Counted from the first letter of the whole stretch, positions 41,209-60,768 are shown. The stretch: DNA of 60,768 nt, filler included, from Bipalium vagum (GCA_037834085.1; 3 parts of 3 records of this genome joined end to end with filler, not necessarily neighbours in it), one strand, 5' to 3'. Notes: generated by a model from the letters alone, not told the origin. A program made the numbers and translations.

Positions 41209-41299
41209 TTTACCAATTATTTTTAACATGGTTGGTCATTTTAATAATAAAAACGTCAAATTATAAAGTGTCCAATTAATTTGACGTTGACTATATTGT

Positions 41300-41940
41300 T
41301 TATGATCTTCTGCTATCGTTCTGGGAACTGGTGGATTCAATCATGAAAATAGTGTTTGTTTGGAAGAAATAAAGTCATCGATGAATTTTCGGATATCTGA
41401 TACATTTCGAAAACTCTGTCCAGCTAAGGAATGTTGCATTGACCTGAATAAATAATAATCTGAGAACTCCATGTCTATTGAATAATCCACACGAGGAAGA
41501 ACATTACAGCCTAAATTGAAGATAATGTCCTGCGTTGCAGCAGTAACAATTTGCATTGTCATGAAGCAAAATGACTTTACGAAATTCCATGTCCAATAAA
41601 TGGTATTTTTATCAATTTCTTTACTATAACGTCTTAATTGATCACTGTAGCATTGTGCATTAATTGCTTGACCCAGAACTAACCAATGAATGCTTACTTT
41701 TAGGATTACCGTAATGAATCCAATTTTAGTTATCATTGACTTCAGTTTTTTGGTACTTTACAAATAGAGAAAGACATATTCTAATCGTTGACCAATATTT
41801 GATTTCGGAAAGATGGTGTGGTACTAAAATTTCAGGATTTTTGTCATGTCACGTAATAAATTTTTTTTTATATAATTAAAAAAAGATAAAAATATATGTA
41901 GTTTTAAAAATGAGATTTTAAAATTTATGCAAACACCCAA
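41300..41940 (-). mobile_element. Internally deleted mariner remnant
   Basis: GQAINAQCYSDQLRR..LPRVDYSIDMEFSDYYLFRSMQHSLAGQSF. Confidence 0.85.
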
Positions 41941-42018
41941 TACACAAAATTATTAACCAATCTTCTTTGAAAGAAATACTTTATAAGTATTGAAAGTTTT
42001 AATATTATTATTCAAGTA

Positions 42019-43236
42019 TTAGGTCATTAAGTATGAAATGCATTACTTTGTATGGTCATTTTTAAATTCTAATACCTCTGCGAATTTTTATTCTTAAATA
42101 ATAAACTTTGTTTTAATATTTAACTAAAGCCACACTTTCAAAAAATCAAGTGACATATTTTAGATAAATATATGATTTGTAATTTACTGTTTAATGGAAA
42201 AATTCAAAATTCTTATATTAATGGAATTCGAGTTCCGTAGAAAATCCATGATTGCTCAGACCGTCCGGAACTTAAAGGATGTCTTCGGTAGTAATACTCC
42301 TTTTCAAATCATCATCAGCCGTTGGTTTGAAAAATTCAGATATTGAGATTTTTGCTTGGAAAATCAGCCCCGAGAAAAACCAAAAATATCAATTTGCAAA
42401 GGTGAATTAAAAGCTTTCGTGGAAAAAAATCCCAGCCAAACTACCACAGATTTACCAACAAGGTTTGGTGCTTACGTCTCAACTATTTTGATTCATCTGC
42501 GACAAATTAATAAAGTCAAAAGACTCTACCGATGGATTTCATCGGATTGACAGATATCCATAAGAAAAAAATGGCTTCAATACAAGCACAAGAGTGACTC
42601 ATTTTTGCACCGTATTGTTACGTGTGACGAAAAGTGGATCCCCTATGACAATCGAAAGCGTTCTACACAATGGTTAGATGCAGATGAACCCTCTAAAACA
42701 TGACCACCGTTTGGTGGACAAGTCTTTAAGTGATATACCATAGTTTCTTGAAACCAAGTCAGTCAATCACAGCAGAGCTTTACTGCACTCAAATGGAAGA
42801 AATAATGAAGAATCTGGCAAAAAACAGCTGAAATTGGCCAATAGAGATAAACCAATTCTTCTCCATGACAATGCCGACCGCAAGTTTGCAAATCGGACTC
42901 AATTAAAAATTATGGAGATGGATTTGGAAACAATCGATCATCCTGCTTATTCTGTAGACTTTTCACTTACAGATTATTGTTTTTTCCTTAATTTTGACAG
43001 CAAGGAAAAATATTGCGCAGAGGCTGCTTAAGGTTCATTCACTCAATTTATTGATTCCCTCAAACCAGAGTTTTTCGATAAAGGCATTTCCGACCTACTA
43101 ACGAGAAGTGTCTTCTTTCTGACGGTGCATACTTCGATTGATTCCCTTTTTTTTTATTATAGGTACAAAATTTATTAAAATTTCTATTAACATATTTATT
43201 GATTCTAGAAAATAATTATACATTTCATGGCCCGTA
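42019..43236 (+). mobile_element. Near full-length decayed mariner element
   Basis: TA|TTAGGTC left end; MEKFKILILMEFEFR; RIVTCDEKWIPYDNRKR; LLHDNA; HPAYSVDFSLTDY. About 1.2 kb with frameshifts and stops. Confidence 0.9.
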
Positions 43237-43674
43237 TATTTTTATAATTCGTCATTTCATTAATAATTATATTTTAAATTCAATCAATTTTATTTAGTTA
43301 TCAGTTCCTTAAAGTTAAAAATTTCTTAAAATAAATTTCCCTCAGAGAAAAATTTTATTCTACAAAGGAATTGTTTTATGATCTATCTTTATTAACCTAT
43401 CTTTATAATCTTAATCTTGTGAACAATATAAATTTACTTTTCGAATATACGCCTCTCCACATTATTATTATTAGTAGTTAAAGTAGTATACATATATTAA
43501 TAGTTAGTCGTTGGATCAATTTAGCCATTACAAAGTTTTAAACAATAATAAAGTTTAAATATTTTTATTATTATTTGTCGTTTTTGAAAAAAAATTAATT
43601 TAAAATTCTTGATTTCAATTCTTTAATGCAAGAAATTGTTGTTGATGTATTTTCGTTAAAAGTTTTTGCTTCAG

Positions 43675-46600
43675 AAAATAAATTTCAGCAAACTTATGCT
43701 TGGACTGCATTAACAAGAGCATTAATTTTATGCAACGAGGCTTTCCACATTAAATCGTCTGACGATAAATCGATTTTGGATATTGATGAAAGTCTATGGA
43801 GATCATTCAACGATTGTGAGTCGGTCAGGAAATGGGGAGGATCCATTACACATTATAAGCAAAAAAATATTTGTTTGTTTGGACCAAATTATGACAATCT
43901 AACCAACTGTAAGGTAAACTTACTATTTCTACTAATTTATTGATTAAAAATAATGAAATTAAAATTAGTCTTCTTTTTCCATTTTTATTACTCTTATTAT
44001 TTTTCTTAAAAATTATTTTATTATTATTATTATTACCAGCTCTCAATTCATAAACTAAATGATGGAGACTCTAGATTCTTGTTGGTTCTTCGAGGAAATC
44101 CTCTTAATGTTTTGCAATGCTGTTCAACAATATTAATTGATGGGAAAGAAGAAAATATAAATTTGTGGAGTTCTCGAATTATTGAGTTTTATGAAGAAAT
44201 GAAGGAACGAAGTCAATTTGTTCAAGCATTGTGTGATTATAGAATCAGTCCGGAAATATTTCCCCCTGAGTAAGTAAATTGAAACTGAAATTTCTTTTGA
44301 AATAATATAATTGTAAAAAGTATGTTTGAGTTGAGATGGATATGTTTACGTCTCCGTGAAAGAAATCTTTATCATTAATTTTAGATCAAAATATGATTGG
44401 ATTTGAAGTTGCAAAATTATTTTATTTGTTTTTGAACGTTGATTAAATTTTAATAATAAATCCATTTAAAGTTATTTCTATGTTAATTTTCGTATTTTTT
44501 CAAATTTTTTAATTGAACAAAATGTAACGAATTTTCGTAAATTTAGCACGAAAGAAATTACCACTGATTGTAACAGTCGAATTCCGAGAAATGGATTGAG
44601 ATTTATTGGCATTATTTCATTTAACGACTCCTTGAATCCATCAATAGTATCATTTGTAGAATCGTGCGATAAATGTGGGATAAGATTGGTGTTAAATGCT
44701 CAAAAAAGTGAAGTTCCTTTAATCTCAAATAATAAGGTTTACTTTTTACTGTTTTTGAATAAAAGCTTGTTTATTGTTTGTTATTTTTACTAGATTGATA
44801 CAACAGTTCGCTGACATAATTTGCATTTTTTACTTGTTATAAATTATAATTATGAAAAAAAAATTTTAGATATGCGCTTATTTCAATATTACTAAACTAA
44901 TGCAATGTTTTAAATATAATTTAGCTAATAATTTTTATAACGAATAACTTTTAATATTAAATAATATTTTTAAATATTTTTTAGAATTCCTACGATTTAC
45001 GTGTGTTATTATTATTATTATTATTATTATCATTATTACTGAAGTATATTTATTAATTGACTATGAAAATTTTAAGATCATTTTTATTTTTAAAATATTA
45101 TATGATCTAATATAAATTTTAATGAAGATAATAAAATATTTAATTTTAGCAATTTTTTTTCAATAATTAATTGTAATTAATTGAAATAATTATCTCATAG
45201 TAAAATGAAATTTATTTATATTTTTAAAAAATTTAAATAGAAAAAAATATGGAGAAATGATTGATCATATTAATTTTTGGTTATAGGAAATGAAATCGAT
45301 AAAAGAACTTCGCATCATATCTGAGACTGCATTGAGCTCATATTCAAACAAAATTTTGTTAAAAATGATTGAAAACACAAATCTTGTTATTTGTCAAACT
45401 GATAGGAAAAAAATACAGAGTCTGATAGATTTTTGTCGATATAAACAGAAATATATTGTTGGAGTGATAGAAAATGATAGTGAATATTTGCCAACTCTTT
45501 TATCATCCCATGTCGGTGAGTACATTTCCCACATATGAGACTGGATATAATCAGCTATTTTGACTCCAGGGATAATCACTCAATCTAGATCCAATAATCT
45601 TAGCAAACAAATCGCTGACGTTCGTGTAATGGATGACTTGTTGTCCTTGGTTCAAGCCATCAAAGAGTCGAGAAAAATATTTCGAGTGCTCACTATCATG
45701 ATCAGCATGGTGCAATATCCTAAACTAACGTTTTTATTTGGCTTCTTATCTTTTACATTTTTAGGTGTACCATTGGCTATAAACTTAAATTTAATTCTGG
45801 CTTTTGAGTTATGTTTTTTGGTAAGGATTTTTCAATTTTTATTTTTAAAAAATGCATAGTTTTTATTCTCGAAATTCTCTTATTTTTGATTATAATTTAC
45901 AGTAAGAAATAATCAATAATCTTGTCAGTTTTATTTAATAAAAATATTAAATAATGACCTACAAGTAATGAACTTATTTTAATCATTTATATTGTGTGTA
46001 CATTGAAAGTGAGCTTTTTTTAAAAATAAATATTAATAAAAATAATTTATTTGCTTAAGCGAATAAATTTATTTTATTCAGGTTGAATATTTTGTTTAAA
46101 ATATTTAGTAAAAACTTATATTAACAGCAATATAATTTTTTCAGATGCTTTTAGATGGTGGAAAATATAGCAAATAATCACAATTTGCGCGAAGTGATAA
46201 TGCTTCATTTCATTATCAGAAAATCAGCTCCTGAAACCTATAGAATACTTGTTAAGGCTTATGGCAACAATGCTTTTTCTTAAGGGACTTATGAAAGATG
46301 ATGTGTACATTTCAGAAAGGATTTAAGTGTGGAAAATAAAAAACTTCCCGGAAAACAGAACGGTTTGAAGATTTGGAAATATACGTGTTTAAAGATCCTA
46401 TCAAAATCAATATGAACTTGCAAAATCAAAGAAAATGCTCAATTAAAAAATGCAAAGGATGTGTTTTGAAGTAAAAATTAATGTAAAACGTCAATTGGCA
46501 CACTTCGTGTTTGCAGGTAGTTCATTTTCCCCGGGTTTCTAGTGTTAATAAGTCAACGTTTACAAACCATGTGGAAGAACTTTAATAAAGGAAAAGGAAT

Positions 46601-49067
46601 AGCTTACAAACACAAGCGGAGACACATCTAAAAACGTAAAACCACCTGAAATTTTGCTAGTTCGACAAAGAAAACGTTTTCTGTATCAAATTGTAATGAG
46701 TGATGAAAAATTGTTTTATTTTGATAAATCTAAATGCAGACAAAAAATGTAATTCTTTGCTGAGCCATTCAGAGCAACTTCAAACAAAAATTTCCATTAA
46801 AAGAAGGCTATGTCATGAATTCGGTGGGATCATAAAGATGTGAATCATCATAAGGGGATACAACCTGATCAAAGTTACAGAGTACCTGTACAGAGAACAA
46901 ATAATGCGTGAGCCGGAAATTGCATCAAAAACTATCAGAATCTGACAAAAGACGACATAAACTGATTTTGCTGCATGACAATGCTCGGCCATATGTTACA
47001 AAACGAGTGACACACTCACTTGTACAGAAAGCAATCATTTTTTTAATTGAAGAATATATTTTAAAATCATATATACTTCATATATGTTGTCAAATTTTTA
47101 AAAATAAATTTTAACAGAAAATCAAAAAGATCATATATGATTTTATCAACTATATTTATAAACTTTAAATTATTAAACTAATTTTTATCTTTATTATAAT
47201 CAATAATTGTAGTCCTGAAGAGAAACATTAAAATTTTCATTAGCAAAAGTTATAAAAATTTATTAAAAAGTTTGCAAAAAACCCATTTAAACAAAATGGG
47301 GCCAAACCAAATTTCAACCAATCTTATAATTGTGTAAAATTGATAAATCATACTTTTTACAAAGCAATCAAAGTAATACAAGTCTAAAAATTCTATTCAA
47401 TTGATACACTCAACATCACCTGTAATGTTTCAACATTGTCTCAGGTCTTCACGTGAAATAAAAAAATTTCTCAAATTACGAGCAAAAATATTAAATATTT
47501 CGCAAATGTTTCGAACTAAATAAGAAATATTTAGTTCCCAAAACCCACGAGATAATCATGTCAGAAAATAAAACCAAAAAAAATACAGAAAAGAAAGTAA
47601 AATACAATGGGATTATTAAAAATCGATTATCGTTACTTAAAGTAATCGGAGTCCATAAAGTACCCTCAAATTTACAAGTTTGATAGGGAGCCCAGAGCAA
47701 TCCTTATAATAATTGGGCATATCAGTTATTTACCTTTCATTAAGTTTTCAAAAAAATATCAGTTTCGCTTTTTTGAAATTACTCAGTCACACTGGAAGCC
47801 TATTATTTGCAACAAACCCACTAAGGGTAAAAAAAGAGTCTCTACTGTCACTGAGGAAGAGAGAAAATAATTTACTCCTAAATTCCTAATCTGGGAAAAA
47901 TTAATTAATAGCGTAAGCCTATTTTAAAATCAACACAACATTGTCTATGTTAAAAGTTTATACAACAGTTTTTATTTCGTGATTCTAGAAGATTTATAAT
48001 ACTTATAACTAAAGATAATAACAATAAATAATAATAAAAGTTTTGAAATCTAAATTGAAATTTGTTAACTTGATTGATAAAATATATATTTGAGAAAAGG
48101 ATCATACGCGCTATGGAGTTATTTGTGTGGAGTGATTAAATCTTAGGCAGAACTATCCCTTTGTCAATCTCTACTCAACATTATTTAATTTTTTTTTCAA
48201 TAAGTTTATTATAAATTATTATTAGTAGTAACGGTAATATGAATTATTATTTTTAATGCTCTCATATTTAACTATAAGTAAAACAAAAATAATTTTAAAA
48301 ACCGAGATCATTATTTTTATACTCTTATTAGTATTTTTATTATTTTATTATTAGTTCTTATAATTGGTAATTTTCAACTCTTTTATTGGACTTTAGATAC
48401 CAACAATATGTGTATTTTTGCAAAAGTTATATAATAAGAATGTCATTGTCCAAACATGGAAATTTATGGATTTCATGGTAGTTCTTGAAATCGGGTCCAT
48501 ACAATTAGTCGGTTCTATTTTCTCTTATATTGCAGTTTTGACACTCCACGGTTTTTGGCCACGAAAACTTTTGATGATTCGAAATTTGTGGTATTTGCAA
48601 ACGATTAACAGCATGGCCGATTCGTATGGACAGGAATGGGTTTGGGAGCAATTTGATTTTCCAAAATCATGATTCTCCTTTCCAATATTTAGACATATTC
48701 CCAAAGAATGAATCTCAATCTTTTAGCGTCATCTTCGTTATTCGTTACGCTTTGTATATTGCAAATCGTAGGTATTTTGACAACGGCAACCGATCTTGTT
48801 TCAAATCCGCTCAAATGTTTCAAGAATTATAAAATGATCTTGTCCATCACATTTTGTGGAGTTTTGGTTGCCTCATTCGTCTTCGGATTATCTCGGCTGA
48901 GAATCGTGGAATTGTGCCCAGTGGAGTAATTTTAAATTGATTTAAATCGACTTTGATACTATAATCGTTTTAGATGGATCTACTGTCTATTCTCTTTACC
49001 ATTCGCGCTCTACATGATTGTGTTCTTTAAAATAAAACACCTGATCGGGTTCGAAAATCCAAACTGA
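43675..49067 (+). CDS. Highly divergent Na+/K+-ATPase alpha (P2C) subunit-like protein, 3' portion (N-domain to C-terminus); probable pseudo-ATPase
   Basis: Eight GT-AG exons join in frame: 43675-43913, 44040-44269, 44547-44736, 45287-45515, 45570-45820, 48397-48639, 48693-48925, 48974-49067 (TGA). Collinear with ATP1A: WTALTRALILCNEA, LSIHK, CSTILIDGKE, LRFIGIISF, SKQIAD, ESRKIF, GVPLAI, IGSIQ, GFWP, DSYGQEW|TYSQR. The 5' exons, including DKTGT, were not found. Confidence 0.85.
46080..47010 (+). mobile_element. Decayed mariner inside the ATPase-like gene intron
   Basis: LREVIMLHFIIRKSAPETYRILVKAYG, IVMSDEK and LILLHDNARPYV motifs. Confidence 0.85.
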
Positions 49068-49415
49068 CCAATGCCGGTTCGTGTGGCCTTGTTTTCGTTT
49101 TCTTACTTTAGATTTTATTCATCTTAGCTTGGAACCTTGGCAACTTGCTCGGTATCAGCACATTTTATTTTATTTGCTCTTTCTTTTGCATGCCAGAGAA
49201 TTTTCAGTTTTCCTTGATAAATATACTTTTAACTTGAGAGATCTCGTTTTTCTCGCAAATAATAAAGTTCGATTTAGAACGACATTAGAAATCATCATTG
49301 TCTTAAATAAAAACTACGAAAACCAATAGTCGGCTCTGTTCAGTGAAGATGAAATAAAAAACTGATGATATTAAGGTATCAATCCTAAAGAAAAATGTTT
49401 ATTTAATTAGATATA

Positions 49416-50761
49416 CAGTAAAATCTCGTTACTATGCCACCCATCGGGACCGAGAAAAAGTGGCATAATAACAACAGTGGCATAATAGCGAGGGTTTGTA
49501 AAAAAAGACTATTTTTTTAAGTTACTATTAGCTAATCCAAAGACTTCAAAAATCGTCGGCTGACGCATTTTCTTTTGTCGGATTCTGTTTATCTCGTTAT
49601 CTAACCTATCGCACGCTAACATAACATCAGTTTTACCGCTGTTCTGTTGCATAAACTTTCGAACAATAATCCATGCACGCTGGGCTTCCTCGAAAGGAAC
49701 AACTTCCTCCTCGACAATTATTATTTTATTATCTTTGTCTTCCAACGGTTCCTCGCTGCACAGCACCTCCTCCGCAATCTCTTCTAACGTAAATGATCCA
49801 CCAGTCGCAAGGCGCTCGTCAGCATTAAGAAAATCCAACAGCTCAATCTCTTCGTTTTCATACATTTTTTCTTCTTCCGGCAGAGATTCCCAAATCTCGA
49901 GCAGCTCATTATCCTCTGGCTCAGTTTGGATTTCTGCTTTACAGAACTTGGCCTTTGAAAAACAGTTCCTAATTGCTAATTCGGTGACTTTCTCCCAAGC
50001 ACGTCGAATGACATGTAGAGCGTCAAGCAATGTAAACTTAAACTCTTTTCCTTCATCCATTGCTTCAAGTCGACGACACAGCAAAAGCTTTTTGTAGTTA
50101 CGTTTGAGAATCTCTATAATTCCCTGATCCATTGGTTGAGAATTGAATTTCCAATTACTAGAAGAGGAAATTTTTCGTTACCACTCATGTTTGCCCCAAC
50201 TAAAAGTGTAATTCTTTGCTTGCTCTTCTTTCCTCCTGTGCATCGCTCACCCCTGAAAGACATGGTCTTATTTGGAAGAAGCTACCAGAAAAGTCCTATC
50301 TCGTCTAGGTTGAAGACGTCGTTTGCGCTAAACTTTTTTAGTAAAGGCTGGAGAACCTGTTGTTTCGACTCAAGAAGAGATTGCGAATTTACTGTTCCAG
50401 CTTCACCCTGTACTGTCTTAAACACAATGCCGTGGCGCCTCTTAAAGTTATCTAGCCAACCGTCACTTGCCATAAAAATTTGGATGTGCATCAACTCGGC
50501 CATTTTTACAGCCTTTTCCTTGATAAGATCTCCGCTGACAGGCAGATTTGCTCCTCTTGCCTGCTTCAACCACATGAGTATGCACATTTTTAGTAGTAAA
50601 ATATAATTTAAATTTAAAAAATCATAACATCATCATTATTTAATGGTGGCATAGTAGGGCGGGTTAGGGGTGGCATAATAAATTTATTTTGTAGTAAATT
50701 TAGTCTGAAACGTAGAAAAGTGGCATAAAAGCGAGAGTGGCATAGTAACGAAATTTGACTG
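49416..50761 (-). mobile_element. pogo/Tigger (TIGD4/6-like) transposon, deletion derivative with both TIRs
   Basis: TA|CAGTAAAATCTCGTTACTATGCCAC ... GTGGCATAGTAACGAAATTTGACTG|TA, with subterminal GTGGCATA repeats. Encodes a CENP-B-type HTH (PVSGDLIKEKA..ASDGWLDNFKRRH), VFNLDEIGLFW and QPMDQGII; the central DDE region is deleted. Confidence 0.93.
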
Positions 50762-51779
50762 TATTTATATTTTTTCTTGCTTGATTACAAAATGAAACCA
50801 CTAAGATATACTATTCATTGACTTTAATATTTGTGCATTTTTAAGATGGTTACAGTAGAATAGTGATATTTTGTAGAATATGAAAACGTAATGAGTGTTA
50901 TATCTAGAAAATAATTAATTTTGGCCTTGTTTTATTTTTTATTATGATTGGTAACATTTTAAAATAATTTTGATCATGTTTAGTTTTCAATCCATGTTTT
51001 TTTCAAACCCACTTAGGGTTTTCATGTCTGTTTTATAATCACAACTAATCATGCTCACTTTCCAACCTGGGTTTTTTCCAATTAATTAAAGGACAATTAA
51101 AAAACAATGTATTAATAAAATTTATTTAATAAATCAAAGACGATATTGGAATCTTTCTCAAGAAAATTATGTCTCCAAGTCTATTTGGCCAGGTAAGACT
51201 TCAGTACCGTTGCATACATTCCGCTCAAACATTTTGTCTTACTTTTTAATGTTTCCAGATAGATTCAATTCTCTGGGTATTGGCACCGGTCTCTTTGTTT
51301 ACAATATTATGTTTGTGATTGACTTTGCGATGAGTAGAATTTTAATCCTTAGCCAGTTGACAATAGGCTTTCCACTTATCACTCATTATATATGATCCTT
51401 TTTAAACTACAGCTCTTATAATGAGTAACAAAGTAGCAGTACTTCTATTGTTGACTAAGATCAAAAATATTTTCAGGCATAAAAGTTTATATAACATTTT
51501 ACTTAACTTCTTGATGAGAACTTTTTTAAATCCATTGGTGACAAATTATGTGAATTTTACATATTACGTAATTGTGTTTTGTTTGAATAGATACTTTTTA
51601 TAACTTTTACGTCTTTTCAATATGTAGTAAAGAAGAATTAACTATCGATGAAATTCAACTGTGTGATAAATAATATTGAGTATTCAGACTTGATTAAGAA
51701 AATATCTGACATAGATAAGGAAAATCAAGTAATGATGGCATTTAATCATCAAACCAGTATGCCACTGCGTAATGTGTTA

Positions 51780-53220
51780 TTACGATTTTTAGACATACAG
51801 TGAGTACCGATGGAGTCAAAACTAACAAGAAGGTTGAACAAATTGTGAAAGCAAAACCACCTTGTTGCGTGTCTCAGTTGAGTTCATTTTTGGCTTGACA
51901 AACTATTACCGGCGCTTTATTGCCCATTATGCTTCATTGGACGGAACAATACCACAAGAGTTTTCAAGTACTGAAGAATAAACTATGCCAAGCACCAATT
52001 CTGGATTTTCCAAGCAGAGATCGTTTTTTTATTTTGGTTACAGATGCAAGCCTTGGAGCGATTGAATCTGTTTTGAGTCAGCTGAAGGAAGATGGAAATG
52101 AAACAGTGATTTCTTATGCCCCTAGACACTTATCAACTCGTGAATTCGGATATTGTTTCATCAGAAAAGATCTCTTATCAATCTACGAATTTGTTCTCCA
52201 TTTCAAGCAGTTTTTATATGGAAAACAGTTCATTGTGAGAACGGATCATAAAGCTTTGGTTTTTATGAACACCACGAAGCACCCAGTTAGTTCACAGCTT
52301 CAAACTTGGCTAGTTAATCTATCAGATTACAATTTTGAACTGAGATATAGAAAAGGCCAGGATCATAGTAATGCTGATGGCCTATCCAGAATTTCCCATG
52401 TGGTTTGCTCTCGATGCCAAACGAAGCATGAACAAACCAAGAATGAGAAGCCAAAAACAAAATACATCAGTGCCGTTCATAATATTACACCTCAATTGGA
52501 AAGAATAAGAAGCGAACAGAAGTCCGATAAACTGATATTTGGATTTATTCAATATCTTTCAGAAGGGAGGAGAGAATACCCTGAAAAGTTGAAGAATAAC
52601 AGTTTCTATCCTTTGAGAGATAGATTGGATGTTATCGATGACTTGTTGCTCTTATCAAGAAACGAACGAAATCTTATCACTATCCCAGAAAAATTTATTG
52701 ATGATTTTATGATGGGAACTCATACCGACTTGTATCATCTTGGTAGCAAGAAAATATTTAACTATCTGAAAGATCATTACTATTGGCCATTGATGTTGAA
52801 TTCAGTTAAACTATGTATTAAACCCTGCTATATTTATGCCAAGAGAAAAATTTATCAAACGCACACTAAAGAAATCCTTATACCGAGAAGAAACTCACAT
52901 TTCTTAGACCAGATCGTCGTAGATATAGCCTTTATGGAAAAAGCAGCGGCACACTAAAGATAAATAGTTATCATTATTGGCTGTTTTAGCAAACTAGTGA
53001 GTCTATGCGCGATGGGCAAACTTGATGATCAATCCATTTTAAAGGCAATAATGAACAATTGGATTTATAAATTTGGCAAGCCGAAGAGTATTTAAAGAGA
53101 TCGAAGGAAGAACTTTTTGATTTCTTGGATTCAACAAAAATGAAAAGATCTCAATATCCAATGTGAATTCAGTTCACCTTACCAGCACCAGTCCATTGGT
53201 CTAGTCGAGCGAGCAATGAC
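51780..53220 (+). mobile_element. Gypsy LTR retrotransposon pol fragment (RT end, RNase H, integrase)
   Basis: LTNYYRRFI; FILVTDASLGAI..VRTDHKAL..YRKGQDHSNADGLSR; integrase H-H-C region (HTDLYHLG..YYWP..C); IVVDI; SSPYQHQSIGLVER. Confidence 0.92.
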
Positions 53221-53229
53221 TTTTTATCT

Positions 53230-53640
53230 CAAAGCAGTACTACAATATCATCCAGTACCCTAAGAAGAATCCTCAAAAAATATTTTATTCATGGTTACAG
53301 AAGCATAAGGAAACCTTTCCTATCAATAAGACAAAGACAAAAGATAATGTTACGAACCAACAAGCATAAGGACTGGTATTTTAATAAGTTCAAAAATGTC
53401 TTCAGTAACGAAAGCATTTTCCAGTATTATAGCCAGCATGTAAAATATGGCGTAAATTATGGACACCAAATGACAAAGGCAAACCAGGAAATATACACCA
53501 AACTATGAGTCACGGACCTAAAATACATGTATGAGGATGTTTTTCTTCGAATGGTGCGGGATTATTAAAGAAGGTTCCATGGATGCCAAATTATATTAGA
53601 GAAGAATAGTAAATAACATTGATGTCGTTGCTTAATCATG
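53230..53640 (+). mobile_element. Tc1 fragment
   Basis: VFSNESIFQL and HGPKIHV*GCFSSNGAG motifs. Confidence 0.7.
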
Positions 53641-54717
53641 AAAATATTATTTGTAAGATGTCAATATAATGAAAGGGTATGTGATATATTTTGTCAATAA
53701 TTTTGGACAGATTACGAACCAAAACCGAGTTCTAACGTCTTTCGATCAAACCATGAACGTTCAACACAACTGAGTAGTCAAATAATATTAACAGAATAAT
53801 ATAAAGTCCTGTTACAGAAGAACAGCTCAATATTACAAAATATTAACTAACTGATAATATAACAAAACGAATTAACATAACCCTTATAAACGAACAGAAA
53901 ATTAAACTTATATTTCAAATAAATAACAATCAAATCATAAACAATATTATAGATGACTATTTGCAGTTAATTATTTTAGTTCAAGTTTCCCTAACAATCT
54001 ATCTCATTAAAGATCAGTTACTCGTTAGACATTAAACGAGTTCGGCACCTGAGCAAAATCCTTAAGAGCCACAACATACAAAGTCTTAACAAATGATTAT
54101 ATGCAAAATCTTTTATAATAAATTAATTTTGATGAGATTCTCAAAAAACGTTTTATCAAGCAACGTTTAATATTTTATAATGTTTCAATAACTTTAATTA
54201 TTTGCAGAGTAGTTCGCTCCTTTCACCATAATATTGAATAATAAAGCGTTGTTAACAATTTGTTAACTGCAAAAAATGATGAAGTTCTCGAAAAATGACT
54301 TTTGTCAATTATTTATATACTATAATTTCTGATGAGCCGAACAATCCAGGGATTCGATAAAAAATGTTTAAAATAATCAGGTCTTATAAATTTTTCGCCA
54401 AATTATTAATCTTATTTATGAATCTTATGAATCATGCTATATTTTGTCATCATTGCAGTTATTAATTAACTTTTAAGATAATCTTTTCATTATAACTGAT
54501 TGTCAATAAATTGCTATGATTTATTTATTAATTAAGTAATATTATTATCAATATTATCACAGTATTTATTGTTCTATTATCATTTTTGATATTTTTAAAA
54601 TAAATACATAAAATAAATTTTTCTTTATTAAAATTATGAACATTAATACTTCGTTAATGAAACATAAATGATAAAGCCGGTTTTGTTTATTCATTGTATA
54701 TTTTCAAATCCTAAAAC

Positions 54718-57301
54718 ATGGATAATATTATAAATGGTTGGTATACAGAAATGTCTGATGATTGGGCTGGACAAGCAACAAGTTTAAAAGTTAAGGAGAT
54801 CTTAGAAAAAAAGAAAACTAAATTCCAGGATCTGTTAATATTTGAAAGGTATTTTGTTCGTAAATATTATTGCTTTTAAATTATTAAACTCTGAAGCACA
54901 AACCACGGTAAGGTGTTAGTGTTAGATGGAGTAATTCAACTGACAGAAAAGGACGAATTTCTCTATCAGGAGATGATGTCAATGTTACCATTAAATTGCC
55001 ACCCCAATCCTCAAAAGGTATTGATAATTGGTGGAGGCGATGGTGGTGTCATGAGAGATGTTGTGAAACATCACAAAGTTAAAGAAGTTATTCAATGTGA
55101 AATCGATGAAGTTGAATTGAATGTTATTAAAACATTTTAAATCTGAGAATAGGACGTTGTCAACCTAAGTAAAAAGCATTTGCAATTTATGGCCATCGGA
55201 TACGAAAGTGACAAGGCTCAAATAGTCATTGAAGACGGATTCGATTTCTTAAAGAATCATAAAAACGAGTTTGATGTAATAATAACGGATAGTACAGATC
55301 CCAGAGGTTTTAGTTTGTAAAATTAGGCTTTTATTATATATTTTTACAGGTCCGGCTGAAGTGCTCTTCCAGGAAAATTATTTTAGATTGATTTTTGAAT
55401 CTCTAAAAGAAGATGGTTTAATGTGTTCTCAAGGTACTTTTTCATTTAATTGTCTTTTAAATAAGACATATTTCATAAGAAATAAAAATAAAATTTTTTT
55501 AATTGATAATTGTAATTAAATTTTTGTTTATTTATCTTTAAAATTAATCAATCTACATCGATAACTGAAACACGATAATTTTGTAAATTTATTTCATTTA
55601 TTATGAAGGTCAAAATATTTGGTTGGAACTGCCCCTCATAAAACTGGTGCTCAGAATATGCAAATCAATTTTCCCGGTGGTGAAATATGCTTTTGGCTGC
55701 GTCCCTACGTACACAAATGGCCAAATCGGATACGTGCTGTGCAGTAAAAATCCGGTAATTCTGTTGAATATTTTTATGTTACAAATTTCGTATTGTCCTT
55801 TTTCTTCCGAAAAATTTCATTTTTTCCTGTTACGATAAATAGTGGTTTCAGTGAAAATTGATTTTTATTTTCTGTTTATCTGTGGCTTGATAATATAAAA
55901 ATATTGATTGTTAAAAATACTTTCTACCGTAAGGAGTCAATTTCAACAAGAAATCGATTTTATTTGATGCAAAAAGAAAATTTCTAAATTAAATGTAATA
56001 TTTAAATAAAAAATTTATTCTTTTGAAAAATTGAAAGCTATCAATAAAGTAGCTGGGTAGAAAAATAGCGTGAAAACATAAGGTCGAATTTTCAAATTAA
56101 AAAAATTGTCATTGGTATCTGTTTGGTTTTCGTCTGGTTTCGTAGTCGATGACATCCGTCCAATCGATAAAAATTTGTGTCATGGGAGAAATGTTGAAGT
56201 TGCTTGTTTTAGAATAATATACTCACCTTCCGATCAATAGACAATAATCGATAATCACACAACGATTCGAGAAATGATGATTTTATAGTTTTAACATTAG
56301 TGATTTCTAAAAAATTGGCTAATTTGGTAATCAAATAAACTTAATCTGGACTAAATTTCATGGCTACAGACGGTGTAGATTAGCCAGACTTTACTAAATT
56401 ATTATTTTTCACTTATTATTACTGATTAATAGTATAATGATTTCTAAGATATGTTTATCAGTTCCTAGGTAGTAGGTAGTAAATCACGCTACAAATTAAG
56501 TCATGGTTTTTACTTCACTTACTTTTGTGACGTAACATTCTGCCTAATATCAATCTAAAAAAATTAACTAATAATTGGGATTTAGAATATTTTCATTTTC
56601 AGTATTAATTTGAATTTTTGATCAATTATCTGGAAATGTGTCTTTGAATAATTTGATCTATATTAAAATCATTGCAAGTCTTGTAATTACTTTTAAATAT
56701 TGACGAAGTATTAATGAGAATCATTAAATATATTTGTTTTTTAAAAAAATATTTATTTCCACAAGGTTTCCTTTTTTAGCACTTCTATTCTTCCGATTTT
56801 TGTAACTATTTTCTCCGTTATTTTTTATTAACCAAATCTGGGACACAAGTTCGATTGTTTTATCAAGTTCAATCTGTCTTCATGTTATTAAGAATGTTCT
56901 ACTCGGTCTGTCTTAAGTAATATATTTATAATAATAACAATTATAATGTGAATGACAATAATAGTAATATTCAAGTTTATAAAGCTTAAAATTCCCTTCT
57001 TGGAACTATTTAGTCATACTTTGCCAAACTTCTCAGCTTTGCGTTAAATTTAAAATGGTCTTTCATTTTTATTTTATTTTATCCAATTATTAATTGCTGA
57101 ATCGAAATAGAAAACGAATTTCAAAGAACCACTTGAAGAAAATTTACCGTTCCAAAAGGAGCTGAGACATTATTCACCTGATGTTCACCGGGCCTCATTT
57201 GCGTTGCCCTATTCCATCCAAAAGGTTCAATTTTAAATTATAATTAATACAATAATTGTTTCCGACAATTGTTTCAGGAGATCGATGAAATAATCTATTA
57301 A
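54718..57301 (+). CDS. SRM: Spermidine synthase (aminopropyltransferase), 7 exons
   Basis: Exons 54718-54848, 54897-55110, 55153-55306, 55350-55433, 55609-55754, 57111-57224, 57278-57301 join in frame. Motifs: [84 protein letters not shown]. Confidence 0.95.
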
Positions 57302-57984
57302 TTTCGTTTTTGAAAAGGTTAACATGTTTTCTTTTTTGTATTTTTTGTTTTAAATAATCAATAGTTGATTGATATTTTTTATTATCGATCGTTTTTTCAA
57401 AAAACCAACGGTCAATGTTCAGGGTGAGTAAGCTTGAGATAGGTTCCCGACTTGGAAATTCATTGAGTTAAAGATTTTTGCGTTGCGGAGAGTTTACTTT
57501 AATGTCGGACATGAGCATATTTTTCTGTGTCCTGCTCACAGTTTCTATTGATCTTAGGTATCTGTAAGTATGAGTAAAATTAGAAACAATGTTGTGGAAT
57601 TTTTTATCGAAGTAAAATTTTGATTTTTCCAACCATTCAAGCTTAGTTTGTTCGCTGATCTCATCTTAGGTCTTTTTTTTTGAAAAGAAGTATTACTTTA
57701 TCCTGTATTAGATCTTGAATAAAACCTTGTTTAATTAATGTATATATGTTAGTTAATAATGTGCAAAAAGTAAGATTTCCATTATGTTGCAGAAATAAGG
57801 AAATCTTATTTGACCAAATTTGATATGAAAATAACAATGAATTAATTACTATAAAAAACTTCTATAAATGCAACGAAAAATATTAAAATTTACAACAATT
57901 AAATATAAATAATCTCTAGCATGAAAACTATTAACTTTTAAATTAAATATTCCTGAAATACATTACAGATTTATGTATTAAAAG

Positions 57985-58734
57985 ATGGAAGTTTCTCTGC
58001 AAAAAATATCAAATCTTTTATCTCAAAAATTTTCAACATCATTTATTGTAGAAAGTAAAGATTTAGATATAACATTTAAGTTAGTTACCCCACTAAATCT
58101 TGATCCAAATTTTAACTATGAATTAGCTCTAATTTATTTCTTAACTTATAATTATATTTTTAATTTTACTGAAAAAAACAATGTAATATATGTAACTGTT
58201 ACAGAATCAAAAGGAAAAAAAGAATCTCTAAAGATAACTCCCGGAGCATATGAAATTTCTTATATATCTGCATATATTGAGAATGGACTTAAAAGTATAA
58301 AAGAATTAGAACCCCTTAAAAAGAAGAGTCTTATCTAATATTTAATGGTAATCCAATTTCTTCAAACTGTGTAATGAAAATTTTCCTAAGGAAAATTCAA
58401 TTGCTGAATTGTTAGGATTTGAAAATAAATCTTATAAAGAAGGTTGTTATGAATCAAAACCAGTTAAAATTTCAAAGACAAAATTATGTTTGATTGTAAT
58501 ATTGTAGAAGGGGGATTTTATAATGGTAGAAGAACAAATATTATTTTTGATTTTCCTTCAAATACTGTTCCAAAATGATATAGAATCATTGAAAGATCAA
58601 AATTCCTAATCTATCGTCCTTTACTTACAAGAAATATTTCTGAAATAAAATTTAAGATATTTGATAATAACAAAGAATTAGTAAATTTTAATGGAGAAGA
58701 AATTAGTTTTACTATTCATTTAAAACAAGTTTGA
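57985..58734 (+). pseudogene. Polinton/Maverick-type minor capsid protein (penton), frameshifted
   Basis: Reconstructed PLNLDPNFNYELALIYFLTYNYIFNFTEKNN..LKITPGAYEISYI..NSIAELLGF..DCNIVEGGFYNGRRTNIIFDFP..VPK*YRIIE..LIYRPL..ISEIKFKIFDNNKELVNFNGEEISFTIHLKQV follows the characteristic Polinton mCP pattern. Several frameshifts in 58320-58490 and a TGA at 58576. Confidence 0.8.
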
Positions 58735-58783
58735 TATAAGACAAAATCGTATTTAAAACAAGTTTAAAATTTAATTTAAAAAA

Positions 58784-58975
58784 ATGAATGGTTGTAACTT
58801 TTGTTCTGATTTCTTAAATCATAATTCTATAAAAATTAATAATCATAAAAATTTACTTTTTATATGTGGTAGATTTGGACATTTACAAAGAAGTTGCCCA
58901 ATGGCACAAAGAAACGTCAATATAGTTAGTGAAACTCAAAGTGATAATGAAGAAACTTTGGAAATACATGTCTAG
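58784..58975 (+). CDS. Small ORF with degenerate CCHC zinc knuckle (element-borne)
   Basis: LFICGRFGHLQRSCP fits CX2CX4HX4C except for the first Cys; N-terminal CxxC. Starts about 50 nt after the penton stop. Confidence 0.45.
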   Translation: MNGCNFCSDFLNHNSIKINNHKNLLFICGRFGHLQRSCPMAQRNVNIVSETQSDNEETLEIHV

Positions 58976-60007
58976 AATTGAAAAATTAGAATTAATGTTA
59001 AGAGAAGAATGTCTAAAAATTGATAGATTAAAGGAACAAGAAAAAGAGACCCACACACCAATAACAACAATTAGAGAAGAAAATAGATTACAAAGAAATA
59101 TAAACATAGCTTCAAAATGGATAAAGGGTGAAATAGCTATCGATAATGTCGAAGAAGTAAAACACTTTTTAAGATGGAATACCGTTCCTAAAACCTGGAA
59201 TTAGAATTGCTACAAAAAATAGGAAGAGAATGATCAACAGACGAGAAAACGTTTTATATTCATTATAAGTATCCAAATTATTTAGTAATAAAAAATGTGG
59301 TAGCACTCAATACATCTGTAGAAGAAATATTAGTATTGTTACACGAACAATTGGACAGAAAAGTTAGACTCACATATTACGATTACCACTCAATAACGAT
59401 AAAAGTTTATTGGAAAGTAGAGTGATTCCTGGTTGGTATAATTTGATAAATTATGAACCAGAAGAAGTAATTACAGGAGAAATGATTTGCACTTTTAAAG
59501 AATTAAGTGACGAGGAAAAGAAGTACATGAATAATATACCAGTAAAGTTAAATCAAGAATTAACAAAAAATAATGTAGATCATGTAAAAATTAAACTCAT
59601 ATTAGACGAAATAGCACAATTACCAATACCTATCAAAATTTTAGAGAAAATAGTAAATAAATTGAGGAATTGGATAACCTTTTCAGATTTACACCGAAAA
59701 GAGTTAACCTTAATATTAGCTAAATAAGGCCAAAGTCTCAGACAGTCTAAGCGAACTTATACACTTATTAAACTTGATGTAGTGATGCCAGATAATACAG
59801 TAAATCATTACGAAATTCCTTTCTTAAGTAAAGCTAAAAAATTGAGAAATATTGTAATGAAACAATTAACATTACCTATTATTCCATTAATTTAGTTTTG
59901 GTAAGTTTATCGATGATGATGAGTATTTTATTGATAATGGCTGTAATCCTAATAAAAGTAATATTGTTAAAATTTCATATTCAAGTTCCATTATGATATT
60001 ATTTTGA
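58968..60007 (+). pseudogene. Disrupted ORF with two predicted ubiquitin-like (beta-grasp) domains
   Basis: The ATG overlaps the previous stop (ATGTCTAG). Repaired translation gives FYIHYKYPNYLVIKNVVALNTSVEEILVLLHEQLDRKVRLTYY[G]LPLNNDKSLLESRV and IKLDVVMPDNTVNHYEIPFLSKAKKLRNIVMKQLTLPIIPL/FSFGKFIDDDEYFIDNGC, both matching ubiquitin hydrophobic spacing. Confidence 0.5.
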
Positions 60008-60038
60008 TGATATTATTGATTTAACTTCTAAATTTCAG

Positions 60039-60659
60039 GAAACAGATATACAATCAACGATAAAACCATTGGATGATTTTCGATCGGATGGTGAGGCTCA
60101 TAGCTCGAAATCCTTCGATAAATTGATAAATGAGTTGGCACAAGATTTTGCTAGTCCCGATAATGTGGAAGAAGCATGGGATAACACTGAAAACAAAGAT
60201 GTAGAGATTGTTGAAATTGATAAACCCGCAATATTTAAACGTTATTGGCTAACAGATATAGACGAAGGAGTAATACCAGAGTCAAAACTGGATAATAAAC
60301 ATCACGAAGTCATTCCCAATGCGAAACCATCAACCATTTATTTGGAAGAAAATGATTATGGCGATTTTATACAAACAGAAAAAGTGTCTGATGCCGATAC
60401 AAGCAATCGACAACAATCGAACGTCATATTTAAAGATAAAGCAATAACTGAGAAACCAGTTCAATACAAAGAAGAAAACGATTTGACTTCAGTAATACCC
60501 ACAATAAACGAGACAAATGCTGAACATAAATCGAAAAAGCAAAACCAATCGCCGAGTACGTACCGCGAAAGAAAAATGTCAAAAAAAGGATGCGTTAAAT
60601 CTCGCTCAGCAACGAATCCAATTTCGAATGGCTCAACAGTTATCAGAAGATGTAAATAA
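60039..60659 (+). CDS. Acidic, low-complexity ~200-aa ORF of unknown function
   Basis: Open from 59997 to 60659 with no in-frame ATG near its start (track start is TTG). Preceded by TTTCAG at 60033-60038, a possible acceptor. Confidence 0.45.
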   Translation, partial: ETDIQSTIKPLDDFRSDGEAHSSKSFDKLINELAQDFASPDNVEEAWDNTENKDVEIVEIDKPAIFKRYWLTDIDEGVIPESKLDNKHHEVIPNAKPSTIYLEENDYGDFIQTEKVSDADTSNRQQSNVIFKDKAITEKPVQYKEENDLTSVIPTINETNAEHKSKKQNQSPSTYRERKMSKKGCVKSRSATNPISNGSTVIRRCK

Positions 60660-60689
60660 TAAATTAGATGTAGAGAAGGAACCGTAACA

Positions 60690-60698
60690 ATATTATTA

Positions 60699-60768
<70 letters not shown>
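60690..60768. repeat. (ATT)n microsatellite at window end
   Basis: Run of ATT units to the end of the window. Confidence 0.95.

What the first reader, a model, noticed from the sequence alone, without database searches (positions are those of the whole stretch)
43675..45820. Na+/K+-ATPase alpha paralog with catalytic motifs replaced but frame intact (candidate pseudo-pump)
Seen: five consecutive exons splice in frame with canonical sites and no stops, including a phase-0 intron before LSIH as in ATP1A genes. Against ATP1A motifs: FNSTNKYQ becomes YDNLTNCK, KGAPE becomes RGNPL, MIDPPR becomes FNDSLN, VTGDH becomes NAQKS, and TGDGVNDSPALKKADIG becomes IENDSEYLPTLLSSHVG. In the membrane, M5 SNIPE becomes PKLTF and M6 IDLGTD becomes FELCFL. 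Known: these motifs mediate ATP binding, Mg2+/phosphoryl transfer and cation coordination in P2C ATPases. Inferred: a maintained, catalytically dead alpha-like membrane protein rather than a decaying pseudogene.
Basis: partly seen in the sequence, partly recalled or inferred. Interest (0 to 1): 0.8.

Follow-up and report, generated by a model that had tools for sequence, protein, structure and literature searches.

The report
Motif-less sodium pump alpha-like gene
This AT-rich animal genome carries a very diverged copy of the sodium-pump alpha subunit gene that has lost the residues for ATP use and ion binding but keeps an open, correctly spliced frame, all six C-terminal membrane helices and the beta-subunit docking loop, so it is probably a non-pumping protein, not a dead gene, though expression is unproven.

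Summary
I found three more exons (48397-49067) that complete the 3' end. Together they give 564 codons plus a TGA stop, with no in-frame stop against 46 and 47 in the other two frames.

Four exons match Na/K-ATPase alpha on their own: E2 at 3e-7, E3 at 0.06, E5 at 4e-4 and E6 at 4e-9. The other four are placed mainly by gene order.

- **Lost:** KGAPE is RGNPL, DPPR is DSLN, MVTGDH is absent, TGDGVND is IENDSEY, SNIPE is PKLTF, IDLGTD is FELCFL. D926 and the KETYY tail are also gone.
- **Kept:** six hydrophobic segments at the M5-M10 positions, and the M7-M8 SYGQ loop that docks the beta subunit. That loop matches 12 of 15 residues against about 26% identity overall.

Neutral drift would close this frame after about 2-3% substitutions per site, yet 73% of residues differ from a canonical pump. 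The frame was therefore kept open during the divergence.

Not shown: transcription (no RNA run), orthologues (none found), and the N-terminal half with DKTGT and TGES, which lies off the piece. My best reading is a maintained non-catalytic alpha-like protein (about 0.55). The main rival is a recently dead or untranscribed copy (about 0.3).

The parts
43675..43913 (+). Exon 1 on the piece (N-domain, up to the FNSTNKYQ position). The acceptor is either AG 43673-74 (phase 1) or AG 43687-88 (exon starts at 43689, phase 0). The donor is GT 43914.
   Evidence: Open frame and splice sites. No significant match on its own. Collinear global alignment to a canonical alpha gives z=2.3, p about 0.02.
44040..44269 (+). 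Exon 2: LSIH... RGNPL (the KGAPE position) ... to the FPP position. It starts in phase 0 and ends with two bases of a codon.
   Evidence: phmmer against PDB Na/K-ATPase alpha-3 residues 480-556, E=3.1e-7. Splice sites.
44547..44736 (+). Exon 3: LRFIGIISFNDSLN (the DPPR position), GIRLVL, with no MVTGDH motif.
   Evidence: phmmer against 8k1l_A residues 552-590, E=0.06. Global collinear alignment z=6.7.
45287..45515 (+). Exon 4: the P-domain part that should hold ARTSPQQK and TGDGVNDSPALKKADIG. It reads ICQTDRKK and IENDSEYLPTLLSSHVG. The donor is GTGAGT.
   Evidence: hhalign places residues 28-71 at profile positions 660-702, the expected place, E=0.11. Collinear alignment z=2.1. No PDB match to a pump.
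45570..45820 (+). Exon 5: the end of the P-domain, M5 (PKLTF in place of SNIPE) and M6 (FELCFL in place of IDLGTD).
   Evidence: phmmer against alpha-4 8zyj_A residues 700-773, E=3.7e-4. Hydrophobic windows at model residues 344-362 and 364-382.
45821..48396 (+). Intron 5, 2576 bases, with repeat and transposon debris. A mariner-like stretch lies at 46603-47111 and high-copy words at 46365-46555.
   Evidence: Frames. Repeat depth. The mariner call is by eye only: Pfam found no transposase family on the two pieces from this stretch.
48397..48639 (+). Exon 6: the M6-M7 linker (about 10 residues shorter than canonical), M7, and the M7-M8 outer loop up to DSYGQEW. The donor GT lies directly after W.
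   Evidence: phmmer against alpha-3 residues 842-896, E=4.4e-9. A canonical alpha gene (L003) has a donor at the same place, after GQEW.
48693..48925 (+). Exon 7: follows a 53-base intron. It reads TYSQR..., then M8 (QIVG in place of QWAD) and M9.
   Evidence: The join gives DSYGQEW|TYSQRMNL, 12 of 15 residues identical to P0149. hhalign places residues 1-33 at profile positions 884-916, E=0.03. Hydrophobic windows at 466-484 and 504-522.
48974..49067 (+). Exon 8: follows a 48-base intron. It holds M10 and a short tail ending ...GFENPN, with stop TGA at 49065-49067. There is no KETYY.
   Evidence: Translation. Hydrophobic window at 536-554. Placed by gene order only.
41209..43674 (.). Upstream flank with no recognisable alpha exons. 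It holds mariner-like debris on both strands (41344-41757 minus, 42176-43028 plus). The N-terminal half of the gene is not on the piece.
   Evidence: tblastn with canonical alphas at E up to 10 finds nothing for residues before about 498. Frames. Pfam PF01359 E=0.044.

Best explanation
[quoted passage not shown] It has been kept as an open, spliceable reading frame while losing what a P-type pump needs.

Shown: the P-domain Mg/phosphoryl-transfer motifs (DPPR, MVTGD, TGDGVND) are gone. The N-domain ATP-contact residues are changed (K480 to N and R544 to F; KGAPE reads RGNPL). The M5, M6, M8 and M9 cation ligands are lost apart from D804 to E, and the C-terminal tyrosines are missing. It keeps hydrophobic segments at all six M5-M10 positions. 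It also keeps, nearly unchanged, the M7-M8 outer loop (DSYGQEWTYSQR) that docks the beta subunit in real pumps.

Inferred: the product folds like an alpha subunit and pairs with a beta subunit, so it leaves the ER and reaches the membrane. There it would act without pumping, for example as a structural or junctional alpha/beta complex, or as a competitor for beta subunits. It can neither hydrolyse ATP through an aspartyl-phosphate cycle nor occlude Na+ or K+.
For: - **Frame:** 0 in-frame stops in 564 codons, against 46 and 47 in the other frames. Intron sequence carries 7.9% stop codons.
- **Splicing:** all seven introns are GT-AG with matching phases, and every intron would give a stop if retained.
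- **Neutral simulation:** P(frame still open) is 0.17 at 2% and 0.007 at 5% hits per site. Identity to canonical alphas is only 26-27%.
- **Homology:** E2 3e-7, E5 3.7e-4, E6 4.4e-9 and E3 0.06 against solved pumps, all in gene order.
- **Motif losses:**
- **Membrane helices:** six hydrophobic windows at the M5-M10 positions and none in the first 300 residues.
- **Beta-docking loop:** the best conserved 15-residue window is the SYGQ loop, 12 of 15, and it spans the 53-base intron. This loop is the beta-binding region (PMC11168508).
- **Composition:** exon GC is 0.29-0.39, against 0.14-0.21 in four of the seven introns.
- **Control gene:** the neighbouring spermidine synthase is ordinary (Pfam E=2.7e-20), so the genome as a whole is not hyper-diverged.
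- **Copy number:** single-copy depth, and the run's own contigs are identical over the exons.
- **Precedent:** pump-independent roles of the Na,K-ATPase are documented in septate junctions (PMC12125057).
Against: - No RNA run holds the stretch, so neither transcription nor the splice junctions are observed.
- No orthologue or closer paralogue was found. An exhaustive HMMER search with E6 gave ordinary pumps at 45-48% identity as the best real hits. A word search with E5 and two metagenome scans also found nothing closer. dN/dS therefore cannot be measured.
- The N-terminal half (A-domain, M1-M4, DKTGT) is not within the 2.4 kb upstream, which holds transposon debris. The copy could be 5'-truncated.
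- GC by codon position is nearly flat (0.356/0.33/0.34), against 0.479/0.256/0.358 in the neighbouring real gene. GARP residues are 14% against 26% in a canonical alpha. Both suggest weak constraint on the sequence.
- Four of the eight exons (E1, E4, E7, E8) have no significant similarity on their own.
- Beta-subunit binding is inferred from one conserved loop and was not tested.
Confidence: 0.55

Rival explanations
1. It is a pseudogene that died recently, or a partial 5'-truncated duplicate that is not expressed. A diverged alpha paralogue was functional in some way for a long time and lost expression too recently for stops or frameshifts to build up.
For: No RNA evidence. No N-terminal exons within 2.4 kb upstream, and a transposon-rich setting. 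Weak codon-position periodicity and an AT-driven amino-acid composition. No relatives anywhere.
Against: An open frame of 564 codons tolerates only about 2-3% neutral substitutions per site. All 14 splice dinucleotides are intact. Exon GC is above that of four of the seven introns. The hydrophobic helices and the SYGQ loop are preserved. Even on this reading, the motif loss happened while the frame was under selection, so the gene was a non-catalytic protein for most of its history.
Confidence: 0.3
2. It is an N-terminally truncated new protein. Translation would start inside the piece, for example at the in-frame ATG at 43626 in the open stretch that runs into exon 1. That would give a protein of about 585 residues with a rump N/P-domain and six helices (M5-M10), and no A-domain, M1-M4 or phosphorylation site.
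For: The frame of exon 1 stays open upstream to 43599 and holds an ATG at 43626. No upstream alpha exons are on the piece. The topology would work, with a cytoplasmic N-terminus and an even number of helices.
Against: Two good acceptors (43674 and 43688) lie just before the homologous part. That pattern fits an internal exon. The gene's intron 5 is 2.6 kb, so a long upstream intron is plausible. No promoter or transcript evidence exists. An ORF look-up for this product found nothing on record.
Confidence: 0.1
3. It is a working cation pump with unorthodox motifs.
For: It has the alpha fold and helices. F475 to Y, K501 to R and D804 to E are conservative changes.
Against: The Mg-coordinating TGDGVND aspartates, the MVTGD motif, DPPR, K480, R544, S775, N776, E779, D808 and D926 are all replaced or missing. 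To my knowledge, no P-type ATPase is known to work without these residues.
Confidence: 0.03

Closest known systems
Na+/K+-ATPase alpha subunit (P2C P-type ATPase; ATP1A1-4, ATP4A and ATP12A relatives)
   Same: Collinear homology from the N-domain to the C-terminus. M5-M10 hydrophobic segments are present. The SYGQ beta-docking loop is kept at 12 of 15 residues. It shares the intron position after GQEW with a canonical alpha gene.
   Different: KGAPE, DPPR, MVTGD, TGDGVND, the M5/M6/M8/M9 cation ligands and the KETYY tail are lost. Identity is only 26-27%. The M6-M7 linker is about 10 residues shorter. The N-terminal half is unknown.
Pump-independent function of Drosophila Na,K-ATPase in septate junctions, and C. 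elegans CATP-1
   Same: They show that an alpha/beta complex can act without ion transport. PMC12125057 cites Paul et al. 2007. PMC11631496 on CATP-1 was listed but not read, and I recall the older CATP-1 work from memory.
   Different: Those proteins keep all catalytic motifs, and pump-independence was shown by engineered mutants. Here the motifs are lost in the natural gene, and no function has been tested.
Flippase (P4-ATPase) modules of alveolate P4-ATPase/guanylate cyclase fusions with altered DKTGT and LDGET
   Same: They are natural P-type ATPase modules kept in the genome although catalytic signature residues are changed in some lineages (PMC13466520).
   Different: They belong to a different subfamily (P4, not P2C), are fused to a cyclase, and occur in protists. 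Loss of activity is not proven there either.
P0149, an alpha-like protein of another animal genome (NCBI GCA_030710605.1)
   Same: It is an alpha paralogue with eroded catalytic motifs (DKTGT to DMTGT, TGDGVND to TGQAAGD) and an intact SYGQ loop.
   Different: The erosion is much milder: KGAPE, MTGDH, SNIPE, the M6 aspartates and ETYY are kept. It is only 26% identical to this gene, so it is not an orthologue. Its annotation is partly faulty, with a tandem-repeat N-terminus.

Membership tests
P-type ATPase, P2C (Na/K-ATPase alpha) | DKTGT phosphorylation site, TGES (A-domain) and PEGL (M4) | not testable with these tools
   The N-terminal half is not on the piece. tblastn finds no match for residues before about 498.
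P-type ATPase, P2C (Na/K-ATPase alpha) | N-domain nucleotide-site residues (FNSTNK, KGAPE, R544) | tested here: not met
   KGAPE reads RGNPL and R544 reads F in the HMMER alignment. FNSTNKYQ reads YDNLTNCK by position only.
P-type ATPase, P2C (Na/K-ATPase alpha) | P-domain motifs DPPR, MVTGD and TGDGVNDSPALKKADIG | tested here: not met
   DPPR reads DSLN. MVTGDH is absent. TGDGVND reads IENDSEY.
P-type ATPase, P2C (Na/K-ATPase alpha) | Cation ligands in M5 (S775, N776, E779), M6 (D804, D808) and M8 (D926), and the C-terminal YY | tested here: not met
   SNIPE reads PKLTF. D804 is E, and D808 is L or F. QWAD reads QIVG, and the tail ends ENPN.
P-type ATPase, P2C (Na/K-ATPase alpha) | Significant sequence homology to alpha subunits in the same order along the protein | tested here: met
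   E2 3e-7, E5 3.7e-4 and E6 4.4e-9 against solved alphas. tblastn hits are collinear.
P-type ATPase, P2C (Na/K-ATPase alpha) | M5-M10 membrane helices and the M7-M8 SYGQ loop for the beta subunit | tested here: met
   Six hydrophobic windows at the expected places. DSYGQEWTYSQR is retained. Actual beta binding was not tested.
Pseudogene (decaying copy) | Frame disruptions such as stops, frameshifts or lost splice sites | tested here: not met
   No stops in 564 codons, phases consistent, all introns GT-AG.
Pseudogene (decaying copy) | Neutral-looking composition, with no exon/intron contrast and no codon periodicity | tested here: inconclusive
   Exon GC is 0.29-0.39, against 0.14-0.21 in four introns, while introns 4, 5 and 6 overlap the exon range. 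That mostly speaks against neutrality. The flat GC1/2/3 speaks for relaxed constraint.
Pseudogene (decaying copy) | No transcription or translation | not testable with these tools
   Only one run holds the stretch, and it is not on record as RNA.

The most novel reading that the evidence does not exclude
It is a natural, dedicated non-pumping alpha subunit. The gene has shed ATP hydrolysis and ion binding but keeps the beta-subunit docking loop. It would work only through the alpha/beta complex's pump-independent roles, such as junction or adhesion scaffolding, signalling, or titrating beta subunits away from real pumps.
Probability: 0.3. Interest if true: 0.75.

Novelty: new variant of a known kind. 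Interest (0 to 1): 0.5.

Why it matters
Whether the sodium pump has real functions apart from pumping (junction assembly, signalling, a 'non-pumping pool') has been argued for decades. So far it has been tested only with engineered dead mutants of working pumps. A natural paralogue that discarded catalysis and ion sites but kept the fold and the beta-docking loop would separate the two roles genetically. It could be knocked down without touching ion transport, and the residues it still conserves would show which surfaces serve the non-pumping role. It would also add a P2C member to the short list of P-type ATPase pseudoenzymes. If it proves to be an untranscribed relic, it is an ordinary pseudogene of local interest only.

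Tried and rejected
- **RNA evidence:** only one run holds the stretch, it is not on record as RNA, and it is probably the source sample. Its contigs confirm the sequence and single-copy depth but say nothing about expression.
- **Pfam on single exons:** only sub-threshold hints, Cation_ATPase E=0.24 and Cation_ATPase_C E=0.022.
- **Word search with E5:** nothing.
- **Exhaustive HMMER search with E6:** 285 hits. The two top scores are a repeat artefact (P0001) and a mis-assembled ordinary pump (P0002). No hit is closer than ordinary pumps at 45-48% identity.
- **Metagenome scans:** E5 found nothing, and E6 found two loci at 40% identity.
- **Exact-product look-ups** of three window ORFs, meant to reach more of the contig: not on record.
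- **Organism identity:** not established. Rfam found nothing. The relatives of the gypsy pol fragment are at most 53% identical and come from metagenomes. Assembly accessions carry no names here.
- **Pairwise BLASTP of E1, E4, E7 and E8** against canonical alphas: not significant.
- **Intron before LSIH 'as in ATP1A genes':** not testable with the two canonical loci I had, because neither has an intron there.
- It was used only in local scripts for counting and for alignment to sequences already fetched. No structure prediction and no alpha/beta complex prediction was made.
- **Contamination or mis-assembly:** rejected. The run's contigs match the exons without any difference.

Full report
**What is there**

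The piece (41209-60768) has about 27% GC.

| Exon | Coordinates | Notes |
|---|---|---|
| E1 | 43689-43913 | or from 43675 with the neighbouring acceptor |
| E2 | 44040-44269 | starts LSIH |
| E3 | 44547-44736 | |
| E4 | 45287-45515 | |
| E5 | 45570-45820 | |

Every intron starts with GT and ends with AG. The split codons join correctly (ga|c, g|gg). The intron before LSIH is phase 0.

After a 2576-base intron holding repeat debris come three more exons:

| Exon | Coordinates | Preceding intron |
|---|---|---|
| E6 | 48397-48639 | 2576 bases |
| E7 | 48693-48925 | 53 bases |
| E8 | 48974-49067 | 48 bases |

E8 ends with TGA at 49065-49067. The eight exons give 564 codons with no in-frame stop. 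The other two frames of the same sequence hold 46 and 47 stops, and the introns carry 7.9% stop codons. Each intron would introduce a stop if it were retained.

**Is it a sodium-pump alpha homologue?**

Yes, but a very distant one. I searched the model exon by exon against solved structures:

| Exon | Best match | E-value |
|---|---|---|
| E2 | alpha-3, residues 480-556 | 3.1e-7 |
| E3 | an Artemia alpha | 0.06 |
| E5 | alpha-4, residues 700-773 | 3.7e-4 |
| E6 | alpha-3, residues 842-896 | 4.4e-9 |
| E1, E4, E7 | no pump match | none |

The weak exons still fall in the right order.
- A profile comparison puts E4 at positions 660-702 and E7 at 884-916 of a canonical alignment. Both are the expected places, but the scores are weak (E 0.11 and 0.03).
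- Collinear global alignments against a canonical alpha exon (L003) give z=6.7 for E3, 2.3 for E1 and 2.1 for E4.
- tblastn hits are collinear.
- Overall identity is 26.8% to the L003 alpha over 448 aligned residues, and 26.0% to P0149 over 527.
- The E6 donor lies directly after GQEW, exactly where a canonical alpha gene from another animal has a donor.

**What is lost and what is kept**

Lost, in order along the protein:
- FNSTNKYQ reads YDNLTNCK. This mapping is by position only.
- KGAPE reads RGNPL, and R544 reads F.
- DPPR reads DSLN.
- MVTGDH is absent. The alignment cannot say whether it was replaced or deleted.
- TGDGVNDSPALKKADIG reads IENDSEYLPTLLSSHVG.
- SNIPE reads PKLTF.
- IDLGTD reads FELCFL, so D804 becomes E and D808 becomes a hydrophobic residue.
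- QWAD in M8 reads QIVG.
- The KETYY tail is replaced by ...FENPN.

Kept:
- Six hydrophobic segments sit exactly at the M5-M10 positions, and there are none in the first 300 residues.
- The best conserved 15-residue window of the whole model is DSYGQEWTYSQRMNL, 12 of 15 identical to P0149. This is the M7-M8 outer loop that binds the beta subunit (PMC11168508). The window spans the 53-base intron, which supports that splice.

**Gene or relic?**

Starting from the present coding sequence, random substitutions with the local base composition close the frame quickly. The chance that it stays open is 0.39 at 1%, 0.17 at 2% and 0.007 at 5% hits per site. Yet 73% of the residues differ from canonical pumps. 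Nearly all of that divergence, including the motif losses, must have happened while stops and frameshifts were being removed by selection.

Further points for a gene:
- Exon GC is 0.29-0.39, against 0.14-0.21 in four of the seven introns. Introns 4, 5 and 6 (0.389, 0.264 and 0.321) overlap the exon range.
- All splice sites are intact.
- The neighbouring spermidine synthase gene is ordinary (Pfam E=2.7e-20). The divergence is therefore specific to this gene.
- Depth is single-copy, and the run's contigs match the exons without any difference.

Points against a firm verdict:
- No RNA run holds the stretch.
- No orthologue or closer paralogue was found. This rests on an exhaustive HMMER search with the best conserved exon, a word search and two metagenome scans.
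- The N-terminal half is not on the piece, and the 2.4 kb upstream holds transposon-like debris.
- GC by codon position is nearly flat, and the protein is poor in G, A, R and P residues. Both are signs of weak constraint on most positions.

A copy that lost expression very recently would look the same as a live gene on all these measures.

**Mechanism**

- Shown: the protein cannot run the aspartyl-phosphate cycle in the known way, nor bind Na+ or K+ at the known sites.
- Shown: it keeps the membrane architecture and the beta-docking loop.
- Inferred: it pairs with a beta subunit and acts without pumping.

Precedents exist for pump-independent action of the alpha/beta complex in septate junctions (PMC12125057). 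There are also P-type ATPase modules kept despite altered signature residues (PMC13466520). One database protein, P0149, shows a milder erosion of the same motifs in another animal.

**Limits**

The joined protein was not sent to any search, fold or complex tool. It was used only in local scripts for counting and for alignment to sequences already fetched.

**Verdict**

- A maintained non-catalytic alpha-like protein is the best reading, at about 0.55.
- A recently dead or untranscribed copy stands at about 0.3.
- An internally started truncated protein stands at about 0.1.
- A working pump stands at about 0.03.

Noticed in passing
window 54895-55835 (+): Exons of a spermidine synthase gene (Pfam PF01564 E=2.7e-20, plus the tetramerisation domain). 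Its codon-position GC pattern is normal. I used it as a control for the genome's general rate of divergence.
   Followed up: partly
window 49512-50629 (-): A pogo/Tc5-type transposase remnant (DDE_1 E=3.9e-11, HTH_Tnp_Tc5 E=2.5e-14) in two frames. It starts about 450 bases past the stop of the ATPase-like gene.
   Followed up: partly
window 51899-52954 (+): An open 352-residue Ty3/gypsy pol fragment (RNase H and integrase zinc domain). The best relatives in the protein collection are only 53% identical and come from metagenomes.
   Followed up: partly
window 41344-41757 (-), 42176-43028 (+), 46603-47111 (+), 53167-53505 (+): Mariner-like and Tc3-like transposase debris upstream of the gene, inside its intron 5 and further downstream. 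The mariner call is mostly by eye (Pfam PF01359 only E=0.044). The Tc3 HTH match is E=8e-6.
   Followed up: partly
window 57982-60656 (+): A run of open frames (118, 66, 119 and 220 residues) with one CCHC zinc knuckle (E=4e-4) and no other Pfam family. It may be the gag-like part of a retroelement.
   Followed up: no
P0149 / locus L002 (NCBI GCA_030710605.1, CP092870.1): An alpha-like protein of another animal with DKTGT changed to DMTGT and TGDGVND changed to TGQAAGD, while the other motifs are intact. It may be a milder case of the same erosion. Its first 190 residues come from a tandem DNA repeat, which is probably an annotation error.
   Followed up: partly
window introns 45516-45569, 48640-48692, 48926-48973: Three introns of 48-54 bases sit beside AT-rich introns of 126-2576 bases. 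The canonical alpha gene in L003 also has an intron of about 50 bases. The long introns contain (ATT)n-type simple repeats, for example at 44006-44043 and 44998-45044.
   Followed up: no
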